IMG/VR virus record: IMGVR_UViG_3300010885_025649
Span: 62,001 to 126,000 of that record
DNA length: 64,000 bases
Reading direction: 5' to 3' (one strand)
Shown here: positions 7,061-55,074 of the stretch, one piece after another
How positions within the stretch are numbered: the first letter of the stretch is position 1
Layout of the letters: each line of letters starts with the position of its first letter
The notes under the pieces: generated by a model
Databases searched by the model: none
What the model saw: only the letters and a program-made list of their open reading frames with translations
What the model was told of the DNA's origin: nothing
Made by a program: the position numbers and the translations under genes

Positions 7061-8989
7061 TTAACTAACCTGTAGCTCATTATAAGCTTTAAATGTTAGT
7101 GGAAAGATAGGTTCAGCAAGTTGTTTAAATGCTATAGCATATTGACGAATCTCCCATTGTGCATCTTCAGATAAACGTAATCCTAAGAAATGTAATAAAG
7201 ATCTTAGATTAAAAGTGATATATAAACTTGTATAAGTGCAATGTGGTAAAACTCCTCTAGCTTGTTCTCTACACACACCATTAGCTAATAACTGCTCATA
7301 TATTTGATAAGCTTTATTAACTTGTTCTGCATATAATTCTCGTACTAACTCTTGATTAATATCCGGATTAGATACACTAGATTGTCTATTAGTTTTACCT
7401 TGCCCTCGAAACTCTTTAGGAATATAAGCTTGGTTCTTGACTACAATATATCTTGCACTTTCCTGATTAAATGAGTTATGAACCACAATTCCATTAGCTA
7501 CAAAATTATGCCAAGGCTTTGTAACACACAAATCATAAGTATCTTGTTCTCCCATATATTCAATAGCAGTAACTTTAACGGGATGAGCTTTAAGTTTCTG
7601 GCCTATACGTTTATTTACTCGCACTCTAAATAAAACAGGTTTATTCAAAGCTTGTTCTGCAAAAGCAATTTCATTTGCTTGAGATTTATGAACTTCCATA
7701 TGACAAGATTTACAAAGAGTAATAAGATTATCAATGTCATAAGCTTTAGTTATATCAGCAGCAACTGGAATTATATGATGTGCATGAAGTATACTAGAAC
7801 CTTGTCCGCATTGTTGACAAGTATAATCATACTTTTCATGAACGACTTTAGCATTTAGTCTAGTCCATGCACCAATATTAGCCCGTTCAGTCGTAATACC
7901 CCCACGCCAGAAATTGTTCTTCTCGCCTACCTTTTGTTTAGCTCTAATTGATCTAACTTGGCGAGCTTCTGGAGTTAAGTTAATCTTATAACCAGTCTTA
8001 CCTTTATTCCAAGGAGTCTGATTTAGGAAGAGTTTATCTATTTCTTGTTTAGAGAATTTTAGATCATGTATCTTAAGCCATTTCCTAATAGTATGATAAC
8101 TACACTCTGCCTCTGACGCCATTTGTGCAACAGAATATCCATCTTGTCTACATTTCTGCATCCAATCATAATCTCTATATAATCCGCTACCAACAACAAC
8201 ATTACCATTAACCATAAAATAAGAATCTTTAGTCATAAGTACTTCATCATTTATTACTTGTACTCCAAGGGCATGTCCCATAGTTTGCCAACCTTCTGAA
8301 GTATAAACTTTATGATTAGTAGTCATAGTTAAAGTTTTATTATCTTCTAATGTAACTTTATATACTGGCTGTATACCTTGATAAACTACATCTTCAACAT
8401 GACCAGTTGTAAATAAACCAGTACTTTCATCTAAAACCCGCAGCCGCATATTACTAATTCGTTTCTGCTTACTACGAAATCCTGCAGGTAATTTACTATT
8501 ACATACTCTTTGTACTGTGGCCCAACCCACCCCAGTTTTATTAGCTATTTGTCTATAGTTAATATTAGCTGCAGCCATTTCTTTAATTTGGTCTACAACT
8601 ATTTGTGGAGTAGTTAATGGATGTTTTTCTCCAATATGCCAATCTTCATATAATTCTTTAATTGTTTTATTTAAAGATTTAGAAGTTACACCAGTATTAT
8701 TAACAAATGTAACTATAGTATCACCAGTAACACAACAACCAATACGATGTCTTAACATCTCTTGAACTACATATAATGGAGCGGTAGCTCTAAAGGTTAA
8801 TAGATTGTGTTCCACAGGGCTAAAATGTTTGTTCTTAAGTAAATATTTAATTAATTTATAATTATCTTCTTGTGATCTAACTTTAAGATCATTAGCTAAA
8901 GAAACTCTAGCTGCGGCGCAAATCATCGCATCATCACCGACATGCTGAATTAATTCAACATGACTAATATTATCTAATAAAGGATCCAT
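7061..8989 (-). CDS. thyX: FAD-dependent thymidylate synthase ThyX, intein-interrupted
   Basis: AAARVS, HFSPVEH and the signature RHRIGC|…|SFNQESARY; C-terminal REQARGVLP and NLRSLLHFLGLR…AQWEIR. Confidence 0.95.
   Translation of the reverse strand: MDPLLDNISHVELIQHVGDDAMICAAARVSLANDLKVRSQEDNYKLIKYLLKNKHFSPVEHNLLTFRATAPLYVVQEMLRHRIGCCVTGDTIVTFVNNTGVTSKSLNKTIKELYEDWHIGEKHPLTTPQIVVDQIKEMAAANINYRQIANKTGVGWATVQRVCNSKLPAGFRSKQKRISNMRLRVLDESTGLFTTGHVEDVVYQGIQPVYKVTLEDNKTLTMTTNHKVYTSEGWQTMGHALGVQVINDEVLMTKDSYFMVNGNVVVGSGLYRDYDWMQKCRQDGYSVAQMASEAECSYHTIRKWLKIHDLKFSKQEIDKLFLNQTPWNKGKTGYKINLTPEARQVRSIRAKQKVGEKNNFWRGGITTERANIGAWTRLNAKVVHEKYDYTCQQCGQGSSILHAHHIIPVAADITKAYDIDNLITLCKSCHMEVHKSQANEIAFAEQALNKPVLFRVRVNKRIGQKLKAHPVKVTAIEYMGEQDTYDLCVTKPWHNFVANGIVVHNSFNQESARYIVVKNQAYIPKEFRGQGKTNRQSSVSNPDINQELVRELYAEQVNKAYQIYEQLLANGVCREQARGVLPHCTYTSLYITFNLRSLLHFLGLRLSEDAQWEIRQYAIAFKQLAEPIFPLTFKAYNELQVS
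7475..8734 (-). mobile_element. Intein (420 aa) with HNH homing endonuclease
   Basis: Begins CVTGDT, block B LTMTTNHKVYT, ends YDL…HNFVANGIVVHN with +1 Ser. Central CQQCG…HAHHIIP…NLITLCKSCH plus PWNKGK motif and HTH-like segments. Confidence 0.92.
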
Positions 8990-23732: not shown

Positions 23733-23821
23733 TGGGAGTGTAGGGAATCGAACCCTAACACGGGGCCAGTCCAGCCCACTTGAGGATATAAATCTCACGA
23801 TGCTCCATACATCACACTCCC
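23733..23821 (-). tRNA. Class II (Leu-like body) tRNA with UAU anticodon, nested in the outer tRNA
   Basis: GGGAGTG/CACTCCC-A73, loop TTTATAT, about 22-nt V-arm, T-arm TAGGG-TTCGATT-CCCTA; one A-C mismatch at the stem base. Confidence 0.7.
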
Positions 23822-26961: not shown

Positions 26962-28197
26962 TTAAACTCCTTGCTGTTGTTTTAACTGTTGCACTCGGTT
27001 ACATAACCAAGCATAGGCTTCAGCTTGATTAGTAATATAACCTTCAAGTACTAACTCATGTACTTCATCAATTATCTTCTTATAAATAGGCCCAGGAATA
27101 ACACCTCGCACTTGTAAATCCCGGCCTTGAATAAGATAAGGTAATTTATTATCTAGCACACCTGCTTTTTGTGCAAATTGCAAACAAGCATGAAGAGTAA
27201 TACCAGTAATAGCAAAATAGAAATCACATAAGATTCTTATATTAATAGACTTTAATTTGTGAGCTAATTGCCTAACCTTACTAATAGTGTCACAATCTTC
27301 AATAGCTTTATAGTAAAGGTATAATTCCAATGCAGGTTCTTCAATACGCCCGGTATTACAACTAAGAGTATTAAGTCTCCGGCTACCATAATAAGTATGA
27401 ACAACAACTGCAACCATAAATGCATGTTCATGTGCAGTTTTAGAAGCAACTTGTTTAGCCCGCTGTAAAATTATAGCCGGCTCATCTTCATACTTACCCT
27501 CAAACCAATACTTAAACCAGCCTACATCAGATAAGAACTTTAGGCCAAGCTCAGGATGATCACCTTTAACAAGCAACTTCTGGAACTCACCGCCAATTCT
27601 CTCCATAGAAAGGTCATTAGGGTTTAAGGATTTACACATCTCGATAGTAGCTGGATCTACAATCTGCAGATTAAAGCGAGAGATAAATTGCGCTCCGCGC
27701 AGAACCCGCAAGGGATCTTCTGCAAAAGCCGGTCCTACATGGCGTAGAATACCAGCTCGTAAATCTGCTCTACCATTATAAGGATCTAGGAATTCCCCAG
27801 TCACAAGATTAAGACCAATGGCATTAATAGTAAAGTCTCTTCTGGATGCACCTTCAGCAAAGGTCATGTTAGAATCGCCTTGAATAACAAAGCTGCGATG
27901 TTTATCACCAACTTTAGATTCACGACGAGGGAGAGAAACCTCAAGATCATTAACACTATATACTTGGAACTGTGCCCCTAATAGTTTAGGCTCCGAAGCT
28001 TTTACAGTCTCAGCATACCGATATAGTATATGATGTAGCTTCTCCGCTTCAATTCCATATACTTCAATATCTAAATCTTTAGGAGTAATACCCAAAAGCA
28101 TATCTCTAACAAAGCCACCAACTGCATAGACTTTAGCAGTGGGAACAAAGTTAATGACAAACTGAGCAAAGTTGTGGCCTTTCTGTATTAGTTCCAT
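26962..28197 (-). CDS. tRNA nucleotidyltransferase (CCA-adding enzyme, class II)
   Basis: VGGFVRDMLLG…DLDIEV, SRRDFTINAI, DPYNGRADL, FAEDPLRVLRGAQF, GRDL. Confidence 0.92.
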   Translation of the reverse strand: MELIQKGHNFAQFVINFVPTAKVYAVGGFVRDMLLGITPKDLDIEVYGIEAEKLHHILYRYAETVKASEPKLLGAQFQVYSVNDLEVSLPRRESKVGDKHRSFVIQGDSNMTFAEGASRRDFTINAIGLNLVTGEFLDPYNGRADLRAGILRHVGPAFAEDPLRVLRGAQFISRFNLQIVDPATIEMCKSLNPNDLSMERIGGEFQKLLVKGDHPELGLKFLSDVGWFKYWFEGKYEDEPAIILQRAKQVASKTAHEHAFMVAVVVHTYYGSRRLNTLSCNTGRIEEPALELYLYYKAIEDCDTISKVRQLAHKLKSINIRILCDFYFAITGITLHACLQFAQKAGVLDNKLPYLIQGRDLQVRGVIPGPIYKKIIDEVHELVLEGYITNQAEAYAWLCNRVQQLKQQQGV

Positions 28198-34120: not shown

Positions 34121-34195
34121 GAAATGGTCTCCTAAGAATGTTTAGAAAGCATTGTAATAGTTGATTCTAAATACTTTATAGAGCTATAAGGATAA

Positions 34196-34217
34196 ACAAA
34201 AGCCCCCGTAAGGGGGC
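34196..34217 (-). terminator. Intrinsic terminator ending the tmRNA transcript
   Basis: GCCCCC-TTAC-GGGGGC-TTTT. Confidence 0.8.
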
Positions 34218-34266
34218 CGATGTCTAACTAGTTGGGTAACAAGGCTAGTTAGCAACCCCGCTCAGT

Positions 34267-34317
34267 TTACGCAGCTACAAGAGCGCGCTTACGAGAGAAA
34301 GGATAAATGTTATTGAC
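34267..34317 (-). other. tmRNA tag reading frame (A)VNNIYPFSRKRALVAA*
   Basis: Direct translation; resembles cyanobacterial ANNIV.F.R..AA tags. Confidence 0.9.
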
Positions 34318-34417
34318 CTTTATTTTGTTTGTGTTTCTTCGCTTACACTGCGTTCAGTGGTACTCTTTCCCAATCATGTCGAAACCTGTATATCCCCGAG
34401 TAGTGGAGATAAGGGGA

Positions 34418-34698
34418 CACGTTACCCCCAGTTTTCACTGAGGCGTGGACTATTCCTTCAACCAAATGCGTGTCTTTGGTTGCCAAGCATTTAAAGCATT
34501 ACTGCTTTCCTAGTCACACTTAAAGTTAGACAAAGCTAATCACGCTCGAAGTGCTCTATGAGTCTCTAGACCATCGTTACCATCACTGGTAGTTTTGGTA
34601 CGGTGTTAACATGTCTGGTTACCCAGATTTAGTCTTCGCCGTTTGAGCTTGGTTTACATTCAACCATTACTGATTGAAGCGACTAACTCTTTCGAGTA
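34418..34698 (-). ncRNA. Group I intron (281 nt, ORF-less) in the tmRNA T-loop
   Basis: Exon …TTCGAU| with P1 U-G pair; P3 GCTC/GAGC; R GAGACT; S GAAGGAATAGTCC; P9 GAAA hairpin; terminal G then TCCCCT. Confidence 0.9.
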
Positions 34699-34871
34699 AT
34701 CGAACCCCTGTCCAGTCATAGTACTCAGTACCACCTAGTCCTCTTCTTAATAAGATCTGTTGAGAACAGTTAGACCCACCGTTATAAGGCCACGGACACG
34801 GGCGCCGAAGATTAAACTATCAGGGCCAGGACGAACCTTGGCCCAACAGCTACAAAGCCTTTGCTTTGTAT

Positions 34872-34952: not shown

Positions 34953-34990
34953 GACAATCTCCAGTGTGTGTGTGGTTAACTAAACTAAAA

Positions 34991-35259
34991 CTCCTCGAAA
35001 AGGATTCGAACCTTTGACCAGTCGATTACTTTACCACTACGGTTTTCACCGCCCTTTCAGTTTGTGGTCTGGACTTTCTCTTCATCCTATTTCTAAGAGC
35101 ACTCTATAAAGTCTCTACACTTGCCCGATCTTACGACCTGCTAGCTCGGGATTGGCATTTTAAAGCTTTCCCCGATTTAGGAGTGTTTTCATCTATTCAT
35201 TTCTAAATAGCGCTGCTATCATTTTACAGTCGACCGCTCTACCACTGAGCTACCGAGGA
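34991..35259 (-). tRNA. tRNA-Asn(GTT), intron-containing
   Basis: Exon 1 35226-35259 ends GTCGA-CTGT; exon 2 34991-35028 begins TAA-TCGAC; spliced loop CTGTTAA; TCCTCGG/TCGAGGA-G73. Confidence 0.92.
35029..35225 (-). ncRNA. Group I intron (197 nt) between anticodon positions 35 and 36
   Basis: P1 CUGU/GCAG with U-G; P3 CACTC/GAGTG; P4 TCGGG/CCCGA; P7 GACTTT/AAAGTC; GAAA P9; terminal G. Confidence 0.92.
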
Positions 35260-35313
35260 ATAAAGGAGAGGTAATTAATCTCTCACACAAACTAATTATA
35301 CCACAAGAATTAC

Positions 35314-52863: not shown

Positions 52864-52949
52864 CGGGGAGCTGGTAGAATCGAACTCCAAGCGCTTCCGC
52901 GCTCCATCCGCTTTCAAGGCGGTGCAGATCCCAGATCTGATAACTCCCC
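52864..52949 (-). tRNA. tRNA-Ser(TGA) with long D-stem and bulged T-stem
   Basis: GGGGAGT/GCTCCCC-G73; D-stem CAGATC/GATCTG; ACCGC-CTTGAAA-GCGG; V-arm. Confidence 0.8.
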
Positions 52950-54972: not shown

Positions 54973-55000
54973 CTTAAGCTCCAGATTGTGTGTTTGAAAG

Positions 55001-55074
55001 GGCGGTTGAAAGGAGTCGAACCTATACACCCCCTGTGCTATATACAGGTGCTCTACCACTGAGCTACAACCGCC
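55001..55074 (-). tRNA. His-type tRNA body with non-His anticodon loop (ATATAGC)
   Basis: G-1 GCGGTTG/CAACCGC C73; CCTGT/ACAGG stem intact. Confidence 0.7.

What the first reader, a model, noticed from the sequence alone, without database searches (positions are those of the whole stretch)
34418..34698. Group I intron in the T-loop of the permuted tmRNA
Seen: splicing at TTCGAU|…G|UCCCCU restores the canonical TTCGATT loop; P1, P3, P7 and P9 elements are visible; no ORF. From memory, T-loop group I introns are reported in a few one-piece tmRNAs. I know of no case combining intron, permutation and phage origin. Maturation would need self-splicing, RNase P, 3' trimming and CCA addition, and the phage encodes a CCA enzyme.
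Basis: partly seen in the sequence, partly recalled or inferred. Interest (0 to 1): 0.75.

Follow-up and report, generated by a model that had tools for sequence, protein, structure and literature searches.

The report
Group I intron splitting phage two-piece tmRNA
A large freshwater phage carries a ribosome-rescue RNA gene (tmRNA) that is both circularly permuted and interrupted in its T-loop by a 281-nt group I intron of the known tmRNA-intron family; this combination is absent from the main tmRNA catalogue, but splicing has not been shown by any RNA data.

Summary
On the minus strand, window 34698..34418 is a 281-nt insert between T-loop nucleotides 6 and 7 of a cyano-type permuted tmRNA.

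- Removing it in silico lets ARAGORN call the gene (tag VNNIYPFSRKRALVAA*). It also recreates a 31-nt stretch identical to uninterrupted viral tmRNAs.
- The insert has the elements expected of a group I intron: a −1 U·G wobble in P1, P2 to P9 with P7.1/P7.2, a terminal G and no ORF.
- A profile built from 56 other tmRNA T-loop introns matches it end to end (E 2.8e-26).
- Across that family, 35 of 44 consensus base pairs show compensatory changes.

The intron family is already known (883 sequences in 21 phyla, with a self-splicing member in Clostridium botulinum). Phage two-piece tmRNAs are also known. The combination is not listed in the 2025 tmRNA catalogue. I found two more viral examples (L245, L488), plus five phage one-piece tmRNAs with related introns.

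No RNA data exist, so splicing is inferred. The phage's "CCA enzyme" is supported only at family level.

Verdict: a real feature, a new variant of a known kind, of moderate interest.

The parts
34699..34733 (-). 5' exon: start of the acceptor piece. It contains the helix-2 strand GGUGGUACU, the T-stem 5' strand AGGGG and T-loop nucleotides 1-6 (UUCGAU). U34699 is the -1 nucleotide.
   Evidence: RF04321 alignment; ARAGORN 3' tRNA domain after in-silico splicing; the sequence itself.
34418..34698 (-). Group I intron, 281 nt, no ORF, ending in omega-G at 34418.
   Evidence: Insert in RF04321. RF00028 gives 35.9 bits, below its gathering score of 50. Leave-one-out family profile: 86.6 bits, E 2.8e-26, model positions 1-264 of 265. 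Matches 59 of 61 conserved family positions.
34680..34702 (-). P1: exon CGAU plus intron UA pair with the internal guide UAGUCG. U34699 pairs with G as the wobble at the 5' splice site. There is a CUC/GAG extension capped by GAAA.
   Evidence: MFE fold; hand check. The U.G pair is present in 56 of 56 family members, and the exon G-to-A change is matched by a guide C-to-U change in 3 members.
34659..34678 (-). P2 hairpin, UUCAAUC/GGUUGAA.
   Evidence: compensatory changes at all 7 family pairs.
34570..34652 (-). P3 5' strand (CCAAGC), J3/4, P4, P5, P5a (GUAA loop), P6 and P6a (GUGA loop).
   Evidence: RNAalifold recovers P3, P4, P5, P5a and P6a with covariation.
34559..34564 (-). P7 5' strand, GACU(C)A, with a bulged C. 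This is the presumed guanosine-binding helix.
   Evidence: Pairs with UAGUC at 34452..34448. Canonical in 57 of 57 family members but invariant, so it gives no covariation signal.
34493..34558 (-). P7.1 (long hairpin) and P7.2 (AAAGCA/UGCUUU with a GUAA loop), the peripheral elements typical of subgroup IA.
   Evidence: the P7.1 base pairs are conserved in 48-51 of 57 members.
34426..34488 (-). P3 3' strand (GCUUGG), P8 (8 bp), J8/7 plus the P7 3' strand (GAAGGAAUAGUCC), and P9 (CCUCAGU/ACUGGGG with a GAAA loop).
34404..34417 (-). 3' exon, first part: T-loop nucleotide 7 (U), T-stem 3' strand CCCCU, acceptor 3' strand UAUCUCC and discriminator A34404.
   Evidence: The 31-nt stretch across the junction is identical to the uninterrupted genes L005 and L007.
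34398..34403 (-). Intervening segment CUACUC between the two tmRNA pieces. CCA is not encoded.
   Evidence: The sequence itself. Homologous 6-nt spacers occur in L005, L007, L245 and L488.
34195..34397 (-). Coding piece. It contains the acceptor 5' strand GGGGAUA (giving G3.U70), GGUUUCGAC, the helix-2 strand AGUACCAC, the tag reading frame 34317..34267 (VNNIYPFSRKRALVAA, then stop), downstream structure, and an intrinsic terminator at 34218..34201.
   Evidence: ARAGORN; RF04321 and RF01851 alignments; terminator scan.
26962..28197 (-). 411-aa ORF of the class II nucleotidyltransferase family, a candidate CCA-adding enzyme.
   Evidence: PF01743 at 73-76 bits against a cut-off of 23. PHROG 2244, tRNA nucleotidyltransferase, E 5e-56. 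All NCBIfam equivalogs score below their cut-offs.

Best explanation
Window 34698..34418 (minus strand) is a homing-endonuclease-less group I intron. It belongs to the known lineage that occupies T-loop subsite 7 of tmRNA genes. Here it sits in the acceptor piece of a phage-encoded, cyano-type, circularly permuted tmRNA.

Proposed mechanism (inferred):
1. The locus is transcribed as one precursor.
2. The intron folds, with P1 pairing exon CGAU to the guide GUCG and placing the U.G wobble at the splice site.
3. Exogenous guanosine attacks after U34699.
4. The freed 3'-OH of that U attacks after omega-G34418, ligating UUCGAU to UCCCC and restoring the 7-nt T-loop.
5. RNase P cuts 5' of G34397, and the 6-nt spacer is trimmed back.
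6. CCA is added, by the host enzyme or by the phage nucleotidyltransferase, because the gene reads A-C-U-A rather than A-C-C-A.
7. The two pieces stay together through the acceptor stem and helix 2.
8. The RNA is charged with alanine (the G3.U70 pair is present). With host SmpB, it tags stalled peptides with VNNIYPFSRKRALVAA.

Shown here: the sequence anatomy, the exact junction, family membership and structural covariation. Inferred: every RNA-processing step and the trans-translation activity.
For: - Exact insert in RF04321.
- ARAGORN calls the gene only after the 281 nt are removed.
- The 31-nt stretch across the junction is identical to the uninterrupted viral permuted tmRNAs L005 and L007, with 29 nt identical in L033.
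- An unguided MFE fold gives P1 with the splice site inside it, P2, P3, P4/P5, P6, P8, P9 and T-stem closure; z = -4.9.
- RNAalifold on 57 non-redundant tmRNA introns predicts 44 pairs, 35 with double compensatory changes; the U.G wobble is present in 56 of 56.
- The window's row is canonical at 41 of 44 consensus pairs; P7 pairs in 57 of 57.
- The window matches 59 of 61 positions that are at least 90% conserved in the family.
- The leave-one-out profile gives E 2.8e-26, end to end, at exactly these boundaries.
- The insertion subsite is the main known one, position 7.
- A family member, the 287-nt C. botulinum tmRNA intron, is reported as self-splicing, with a 5'-CGAU-3' substrate mimic.
- G3.U70, an intact tag frame ending LVAA, and an intrinsic terminator are all present.
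- The interrupted allele is identical in a second viral contig and in a second metagenome.
- Two further permuted tmRNAs in viral contigs, L245 and L488, carry related introns at the same subsite.
Against: - There is no RNA evidence; no RNA run was listed, so splicing is unproven.
- The generic Rfam group I model scores 35.9 bits, below its gathering score of 50. A preprint notes that none of that model's seed sequences is bacterial.
- RF04321 passes by only 0.9 bit, and RF01851 fails (48.8 against 70) because the intron's 3' end is misaligned as a T-arm.
- P4 contains a C.A opposition.
- P10 is weak by eye.
- The resume codon is GUC (Val), not GCN.
- The intron sits on a long branch and has at most 64% identity to any relative.
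- The phage has no SmpB.
- No sigma-70-like promoter was found on this strand.
Confidence: 0.85

Rival explanations
1. The insert is a decayed intron that no longer splices, and the tmRNA is a pseudogene carried passively by the phage.
For: No RNA evidence exists. There is a C.A opposition in P4. The resume codon is the unusual GUC. The intron is on a long branch. It has no homing endonuclease to maintain it.
Against: The window matches 59 of 61 conserved core positions. Its own helices are intact: 41 of 44 consensus pairs are canonical, and two of the three exceptions are alignment slips in a perfect 8-bp P8. The U.G wobble, omega-G, G3.U70, tag frame and terminator are all intact. The C.A is shared with L127 and L245, which suggests a tolerated lineage feature rather than damage. 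The sequence is identical in two samples.
Confidence: 0.08
2. The intron is functional, but splicing is conditional: it depends on a protein cofactor or on guanosine level. It would then act as a gate that times tmRNA maturation during infection, rather than as a neutral selfish element.
For: The 3' end of the intron plus the 3' exon can form a T-arm-like alternative hairpin, GGGG/CCCC, that would compete with the T-stem. Another phage two-piece tmRNA is reported to be under riboswitch control, so regulated phage tmRNA has a precedent. The phage also carries an intron in tRNA-Asn and an intein in ThyX.
Against: Nothing here shows regulation. The alternative hairpin is absent from the other family members in A1. 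Most members sit in ordinary bacterial tmRNA genes, which fits a selfish element with no host function.
Confidence: 0.1
3. The resemblance is an artefact: either a chimeric assembly that joined an intron to a tmRNA fragment, or a bacterial contig misfiled as viral.
For: The record comes from a metagenome, and IMG/VR classes it as linear.
Against: The same junctions occur in a separately catalogued 155.5-kb contig, and a 202-nt contig from a different study spans the 5' junction. Both exon halves match a single gene family. The window encodes RIIA, tail proteins and a cluster of 13 or more tRNAs, and CheckV rates the record 91% complete.
Confidence: 0.02

Closest known systems
Group I introns at T-loop subsite 7 of one-piece tmRNA genes (first described in Clostridium botulinum; 883 unique sequences in the 2025 tmRNA database)
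   Same: Same insertion point (UUCRAU|U), a -1 U.G wobble and omega-G. Same core motifs (CUAGAGACU, GAAGGAAUAGUCC). Same helix set including P7.1/P7.2, and a similar length (281 nt against 287 nt for C. botulinum; family median 271). Profile match E 2.8e-26.
   Different: The host gene here is circularly permuted. The 3' exon is therefore only 14 nt up to the discriminator and is followed by the coding piece, rather than by the end of the gene. The genome is a phage. The sequence is divergent, with at most 64% identity to any relative.
Phage-encoded two-piece (permuted) tmRNAs, such as methylophage Melnitz and the uninterrupted viral loci L005, L007 and L033
   Same: Acceptor piece before coding piece. 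T-arm and acceptor sequence identical over 29-31 nt. A 6-nt spacer, CCA not encoded, a cyanobacterial-style tag, and a location in a phage tRNA cluster.
   Different: Those genes are uninterrupted, so ARAGORN calls them directly. The window's gene needs an extra splicing step and is invisible to ARAGORN.
L245 and L488 (IMG/VR): permuted tmRNAs with a 226-nt or 218-nt intron
   Same: The same three-way combination of viral contig, permuted gene and subsite-7 group I intron. G3.U70, a 6-nt spacer and canonical tags are present. ARAGORN calls them only after in-silico splicing.
   Different: Their introns are more compact, appear by eye to lack P2, and form a separate lineage (L245 and L488 are 94% identical to each other, with only about 75% identity to the window over 57 nt). 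L245 is missed entirely by Rfam at E 0.01.
Group I introns in bacterial and phage tRNA anticodon loops, including the neighbouring tRNA-Asn(GUU) intron at 35225..35029
   Same: HEG-less group I introns in tRNA-type genes, with a -1 U, omega-G and shared J6/7-P7 and J8/7 motifs.
   Different: They sit in the anticodon loop, not the T-loop. The neighbour is 197 nt long. It scores only 12.8 bits against the tmRNA-intron profile and has its own family of relatives.

Membership tests
Group I intron | P1 helix with a U.G wobble at the 5' splice site, formed with an internal guide sequence | tested here: met
   U34699 pairs with G in P1. The wobble is present in 56 of 56 family members, and exon and guide covary at the adjacent pair.
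Group I intron | The 3'-terminal nucleotide is G (omega-G) | tested here: met
   G34418; G in all aligned family members.
Group I intron | Conserved core P3-P8, with the P3/P7 pseudoknot and the P7 guanosine-binding helix | tested here: met
   P3, P4, P5, P8 and P9 are recovered with compensatory changes. P7 is canonical in 57 of 57 members but invariant, so it is supported by conservation only.
Group I intron | Reaches the Rfam RF00028 gathering score | tested here: not met
   35.9 bits against 50. The model misplaces P1. A preprint states that none of its 12 seed sequences is bacterial. This failure reflects the generic model and does not contradict the family-specific test.
Group I intron | Guanosine-dependent self-splicing | not testable with these tools
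   No RNA run was listed. Self-splicing is reported for the C. botulinum tmRNA intron.
tmRNA T-loop (subsite 7) intron lineage | Inserted between T-loop nucleotides 6 and 7 | tested here: met
   UUCGAU|intron|U; subsite numbering as described in PMC11915505.
tmRNA T-loop (subsite 7) intron lineage | Sequence homology to other members along the whole intron | tested here: met
   Leave-one-out nhmmer profile of 56 members: model positions 1-264 of 265, 86.6 bits, E 2.8e-26. The window matches 59 of 61 conserved columns.
tmRNA T-loop (subsite 7) intron lineage | P7.1/P7.2 peripheral hairpins between P7 and P3' (subgroup IA architecture; the IA3 assignment is from my memory of Williams 2002 and was not checked here) | tested here: met
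   Two hairpins at 34558..34493. The P7.1 base pairs are conserved in 48-51 of 57 members. The database paper names a P7.1 region in these introns.
Permuted (two-piece) tmRNA | Acceptor piece (T-arm plus 3' acceptor strand) encoded upstream of the coding piece (5' acceptor strand plus tag frame) | tested here: met
   ARAGORN reports 'Permuted' after in-silico splicing. RF04321 scores 47.9 against 47, a marginal pass. RF01851 scores 48.8 against 70 and does not pass, because the intron misleads the alignment.
Permuted (two-piece) tmRNA | G3.U70 alanine identity pair, and a tag reading frame with a hydrophobic C-terminus | tested here: met
   Acceptor stem GGGGAUA/UAUCUCC; tag VNNIYPFSRKRALVAA, then stop. 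The resume codon is GUC rather than GCN.
Permuted (two-piece) tmRNA | Processed into two base-paired RNAs, and active with SmpB | not testable with these tools
   The phage has no SmpB, so a host SmpB would be needed. No RNA data exist.
CCA-adding tRNA nucleotidyltransferase (phage ORF 26962-28197) | Class II nucleotidyltransferase head domain | tested here: met
   PF01743 at 73.3 bits against a cut-off of 23; PHROG 2244, E 5e-56.
CCA-adding tRNA nucleotidyltransferase (phage ORF 26962-28197) | Reaches a curated CCA-enzyme equivalog cut-off, which would separate it from poly(A) polymerase | tested here: not met
   The best scores are 127 bits against a cut-off of 451, and 109 against 290. PcnB models also match, at about 81 bits.

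The most novel reading that the evidence does not exclude
One intron lineage circulates among phage tmRNA genes regardless of gene topology (one-piece in L127; two-piece in the window, L245 and L488), because its target, the T-loop, is the same in both. In the permuted genes, splicing would be an obligatory early step that gates assembly of the two-piece RNA. That would give the phage a guanosine- or folding-dependent timer for taking over ribosome rescue.
Probability: 0.15. Interest if true: 0.7.

Novelty: new variant of a known kind. Interest (0 to 1): 0.5.

Why it matters
tmRNA genes are catalogued in three forms: standard, permuted and intron-bearing. This locus, together with L245 and L488, shows that the last two can coincide, giving a gene whose product needs self-splicing on top of the cleavage, trimming and CCA addition of a two-piece tmRNA.

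Practical consequence: such genes escape detection. ARAGORN misses all of them. Rfam passes the window's gene by 0.9 bit and misses L245 entirely. Surveys of phage tmRNAs and of tmRNA introns therefore undercount them.

Biological consequences:
- It offers a compact natural system for asking in what order splicing and RNase P processing occur in a permuted tRNA-like RNA.
- It could show whether a T-loop-targeting intron moves between gene topologies.
- It adds to the evidence that large phages carry several self-splicing elements. This phage also has a tRNA-Asn intron and a ThyX intein.

Tried and rejected
- BLASTN of the locus against 50,697 GenBank phages found no match.
- A search with the flanking 346-aa protein in viral contigs returned only the same phage, so no syntenic empty site is available.
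- No RNA sequencing run was listed. The two DNA runs showed no intron-less joint.
- MAFFT alignment of the unspliced gene to intact tmRNAs misaligned the intron's 3' end as the T-arm. I redid it with the spliced sequence.
- Loci that had a tmRNA 5' motif but no ARAGORN call were tested as possible intron forms. They proved to be roughly 77-nt mini-tmRNAs, a beta-type permuted gene, or genes cut by the locus end.
- Four 'permuted' ARAGORN calls (L253, L371, L466, L476) were rejected as spurious. Each also has a proper one-piece call with a canonical tag.
- I did not build a covariance model. I used a leave-one-out nhmmer profile instead.
- I did not send count of structure pairs a 468-character structure string. 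Pair counts come from fold_alignment and my own script.
- P6 could not be scored across the family because MAFFT's register there is unreliable.

Full report
**What is at the coordinates.** The feature lies on the minus strand.

- Rfam's permuted-tmRNA model (RF04321) matches 34733..34267 at 47.9 bits against a gathering score of 47. It places a 282-nt insertion between GGGGUUCGAU and CCCCU, inside the T-loop.
- Reading the sequence, the 5' exon ends at U34699, the insert runs 34698..34418 (281 nt, ending in G), and the 3' exon starts at U34417.
- Joining the exons gives a T-stem AGGGG/CCCCU and a 7-nt loop UUCGAUU.
- Requiring a U before the 5' splice site, a G at the intron's 3' end and a 7-nt loop leaves no alternative junction in this sequence.

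**The host gene is a permuted tmRNA.**

- ARAGORN finds nothing in the interrupted 801-nt stretch. After the 281 nt are removed, it calls a permuted tmRNA with the tag VNNIYPFSRKRALVAA followed by a stop.
- The acceptor stem GGGGAUA/UAUCUCC contains the G3·U70 alanine identity pair.
- After discriminator A34404 the gene reads CUACUC and then G1 of the coding piece, so CCA is not encoded.
- An intrinsic terminator follows the coding piece at 34218..34201.
- The spliced sequence aligns with uninterrupted cyano-type permuted tmRNAs from other viral contigs. The 31 nt spanning the junction (15 + 16) are identical to L005 and L007, and 29 nt are identical to L033. These intact relatives fix the insertion point independently of any intron model.

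**The insert is a group I intron.**

- An unguided MFE fold recovers P1 with the splice site inside it (U34699·G wobble). It also recovers P2, P3, P4/P5, P6, a GNRA-capped hairpin, P8 and P9, and closes the T-stem around the insert. The z-score is -4.9, and 0 of 200 shuffles fold as well.
- By hand I confirmed P1, P2, P3, P4, P5, P5a, P6, P6a, P7 (GACU(C)A/UAGUC), P7.1, P7.2, P8 and P9.
- No ORF of 25 aa or more lies within the insert on its own strand.
- The generic Rfam group I model scores only 35.9 bits against a gathering score of 50 and misplaces P1. A preprint notes that none of that model's seed sequences is bacterial.

**Family evidence.**

- I spliced each locus in silico and re-ran ARAGORN. 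That gave 155 one-piece tmRNAs and, once spurious calls were removed, only the window's gene and L245 as permuted.
- I aligned 57 non-redundant introns. RNAalifold, with no input from my drawing, recovered P1, P2, P3, P4, P5, P5a, P6a, P8 and P9: 44 pairs, 35 of them with double compensatory changes.
- The −1 U·G wobble is present in 56 of 56 sequences. The three genes with a UUCAAU T-loop have a matching U in the guide sequence.
- The window's row is canonical at 41 of 44 consensus pairs. Two of the three exceptions are register slips in its perfect 8-bp P8, and the third is a C·A in P4 that it shares with L127 and L245. P7 pairs in all 57 sequences but never varies.
- The window matches 59 of 61 positions that are at least 90% conserved in the other 56 introns.
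- A profile built without the window hits it at 34704..34419, model positions 1-264 of 265, at 86.6 bits and E 2.8e-26.

**Relation to what is known.**

- The 2025 tmRNA database paper (PMC11915505) lists 883 intron-bearing tmRNA sequences in 21 phyla, all in the T-loop and mostly at internucleotide position 7, which is the position used here.
- That paper tabulates Standard, Permuted and Intron as separate forms. Its phylum table gives Cyanobacteriota 1,062 cyano-type permuted genes and no introns.
- PMC2729099 states that the 287-nt C. botulinum tmRNA intron had been shown to self-splice, and it uses 5'-CGAU-3' as the substrate mimic. Those are the four nucleotides that precede the splice site here.
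- Phage two-piece tmRNAs are documented in PMC9004378: 53 of 133 unique phage tmRNA structures were two-piece by ARAGORN. ARAGORN cannot see an interrupted gene.
- No paper in the searchable library reports an intron in a permuted tmRNA.

**The combination recurs.**

- L245 comes from a 142-kb viral contig. It has a 226-nt intron at the same subsite, a G3·U70 acceptor stem, a 6-nt spacer and the tag AKNNICRLVRKAAPVAV. Rfam and ARAGORN see nothing there.
- A relaxed probe specific to permuted genes added L488. Its 218-nt intron is 94% identical to L245's, but its exons have diverged.
- Five further viral contigs, 61 to 416 kb long, carry one-piece tmRNAs with related introns.
- In a maximum-likelihood tree the window's intron groups with L127 (viral, one-piece; support 99/72) and then L245 (98/76). 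The branches are long and the support does not reach the tool's threshold, so this is only suggestive. It agrees with the BLAST ranking.

**Genome context.**

- The window is part of a 212,497-bp IMG/VR record rated 91% complete.
- It encodes RIIA, tail proteins, ThyX, NAMPT and at least 13 tRNAs on the same strand.
- The genome has two group I-like matches: this one, and a 197-nt intron in the anticodon loop of the adjacent tRNA-Asn(GUU). The second belongs to a different lineage.
- The phage has no SmpB.
- It encodes a 411-aa ORF that passes Pfam PolyA_pol and matches the PHROG for tRNA nucleotidyltransferase. It falls far below every NCBIfam CCA-enzyme cut-off, so CCA-adding specificity is not established.

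**What is missing.**

- No RNA run was listed.
- Two freshwater metagenome DNA runs hold the interrupted allele. One may be the source sample. The other comes from a different study and spans the 5' junction identically. Neither shows an intron-less form.
- Splicing, the order of processing steps, CCA addition and trans-translation activity are therefore inferences. They rest on the anatomy and on established knowledge of group I introns and two-piece tmRNAs.

**Verdict.** The intron is a member of a known family at its usual site, and phage permuted tmRNAs are known. Their coincidence is not recorded in the main catalogue and is rare in my sample: three distinct genes, all viral. It is a new variant of a known kind. 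Its interest lies in annotation, in RNA-processing order and in intron mobility, and it is moderate rather than high.

Noticed in passing
window 34990-35260 (-); intron 35029-35225: About 260 nt upstream of the tmRNA, a tRNA-Asn(GUU) is interrupted in its anticodon loop (ACUGU|...G|UAAUC) by a 197-nt HEG-less group I intron. RF00028 scores 41.4 bits (below its gathering score), and ARAGORN calls the gene only with its intron option on. BLAST relatives exist in 11 or more viral contigs. It belongs to a different lineage from the tmRNA intron.
   Followed up: partly
window 7061-8989 (-): This 642-aa ThyX (PF02511) ORF is split by an intein carrying an HNH endonuclease (Intein_splicing at residues 175-505, HNH at 391-435). 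It is a third self-splicing element in this phage.
   Followed up: partly
window 34412-34433 (-): The intron's 3' end plus the 3' exon (ACUGGGGGUAACGUGUCCCCUU) mimics a T-arm. It misled MAFFT and the RF01851 alignment. It could form an alternative hairpin that competes with the real T-stem before splicing. It is not seen in other family members.
   Followed up: partly
L245:4044-4269 (+) and L488 (minus strand; intron of 218 nt): Two further permuted tmRNAs with T-loop introns occur in viral contigs. L245 is invisible to Rfam (E up to 0.01) and to ARAGORN. The two introns are 94% identical, while the T-stems differ by compensatory changes.
   Followed up: yes
L127, L139, L190, L228, L247: Five large viral contigs (61 to 416 kb) carry one-piece tmRNAs with subsite-7 introns. 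ARAGORN calls each only after in-silico splicing.
   Followed up: partly
L013, L018, L048, L055, L081, L094: These viral contigs carry 77-80-nt 'mini-tmRNAs'. RF00023 matches model positions 1-374 within about 77 nt at 69-75 bits, meaning a tRNA-like domain with no coding region.
   Followed up: no
window 52865-52949 (-): RF01852 (tRNA-Sec) matches at 47.9 bits against a gathering score of 47, between ARAGORN's tRNA-Ala and an odd 91-nt 'tRNA-Ser(act)'. ARAGORN also reports unusual anticodons: Tyr(ata) at 55000-55073 and Ile(tat) at 23733-23821.
   Followed up: no
A1 columns 121/173; window P4: A C·A opposition in P4 occurs only in the window, L127 and L245. The rest of the family has U·G or G-C there. 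It may be a lineage marker for the phage introns.
   Followed up: no
window 34315-34317 (-): The tag's resume codon is GUC (Val) rather than the usual GCN (Ala). The nearest uninterrupted relatives use GCN.
   Followed up: no
L004:5912-5974 (-): A type-P5 twister ribozyme match (RF02684, 46.7 bits against a gathering score of 37.6) lies in an unrelated viral contig that was fetched for its T-arm sequence.
   Followed up: no
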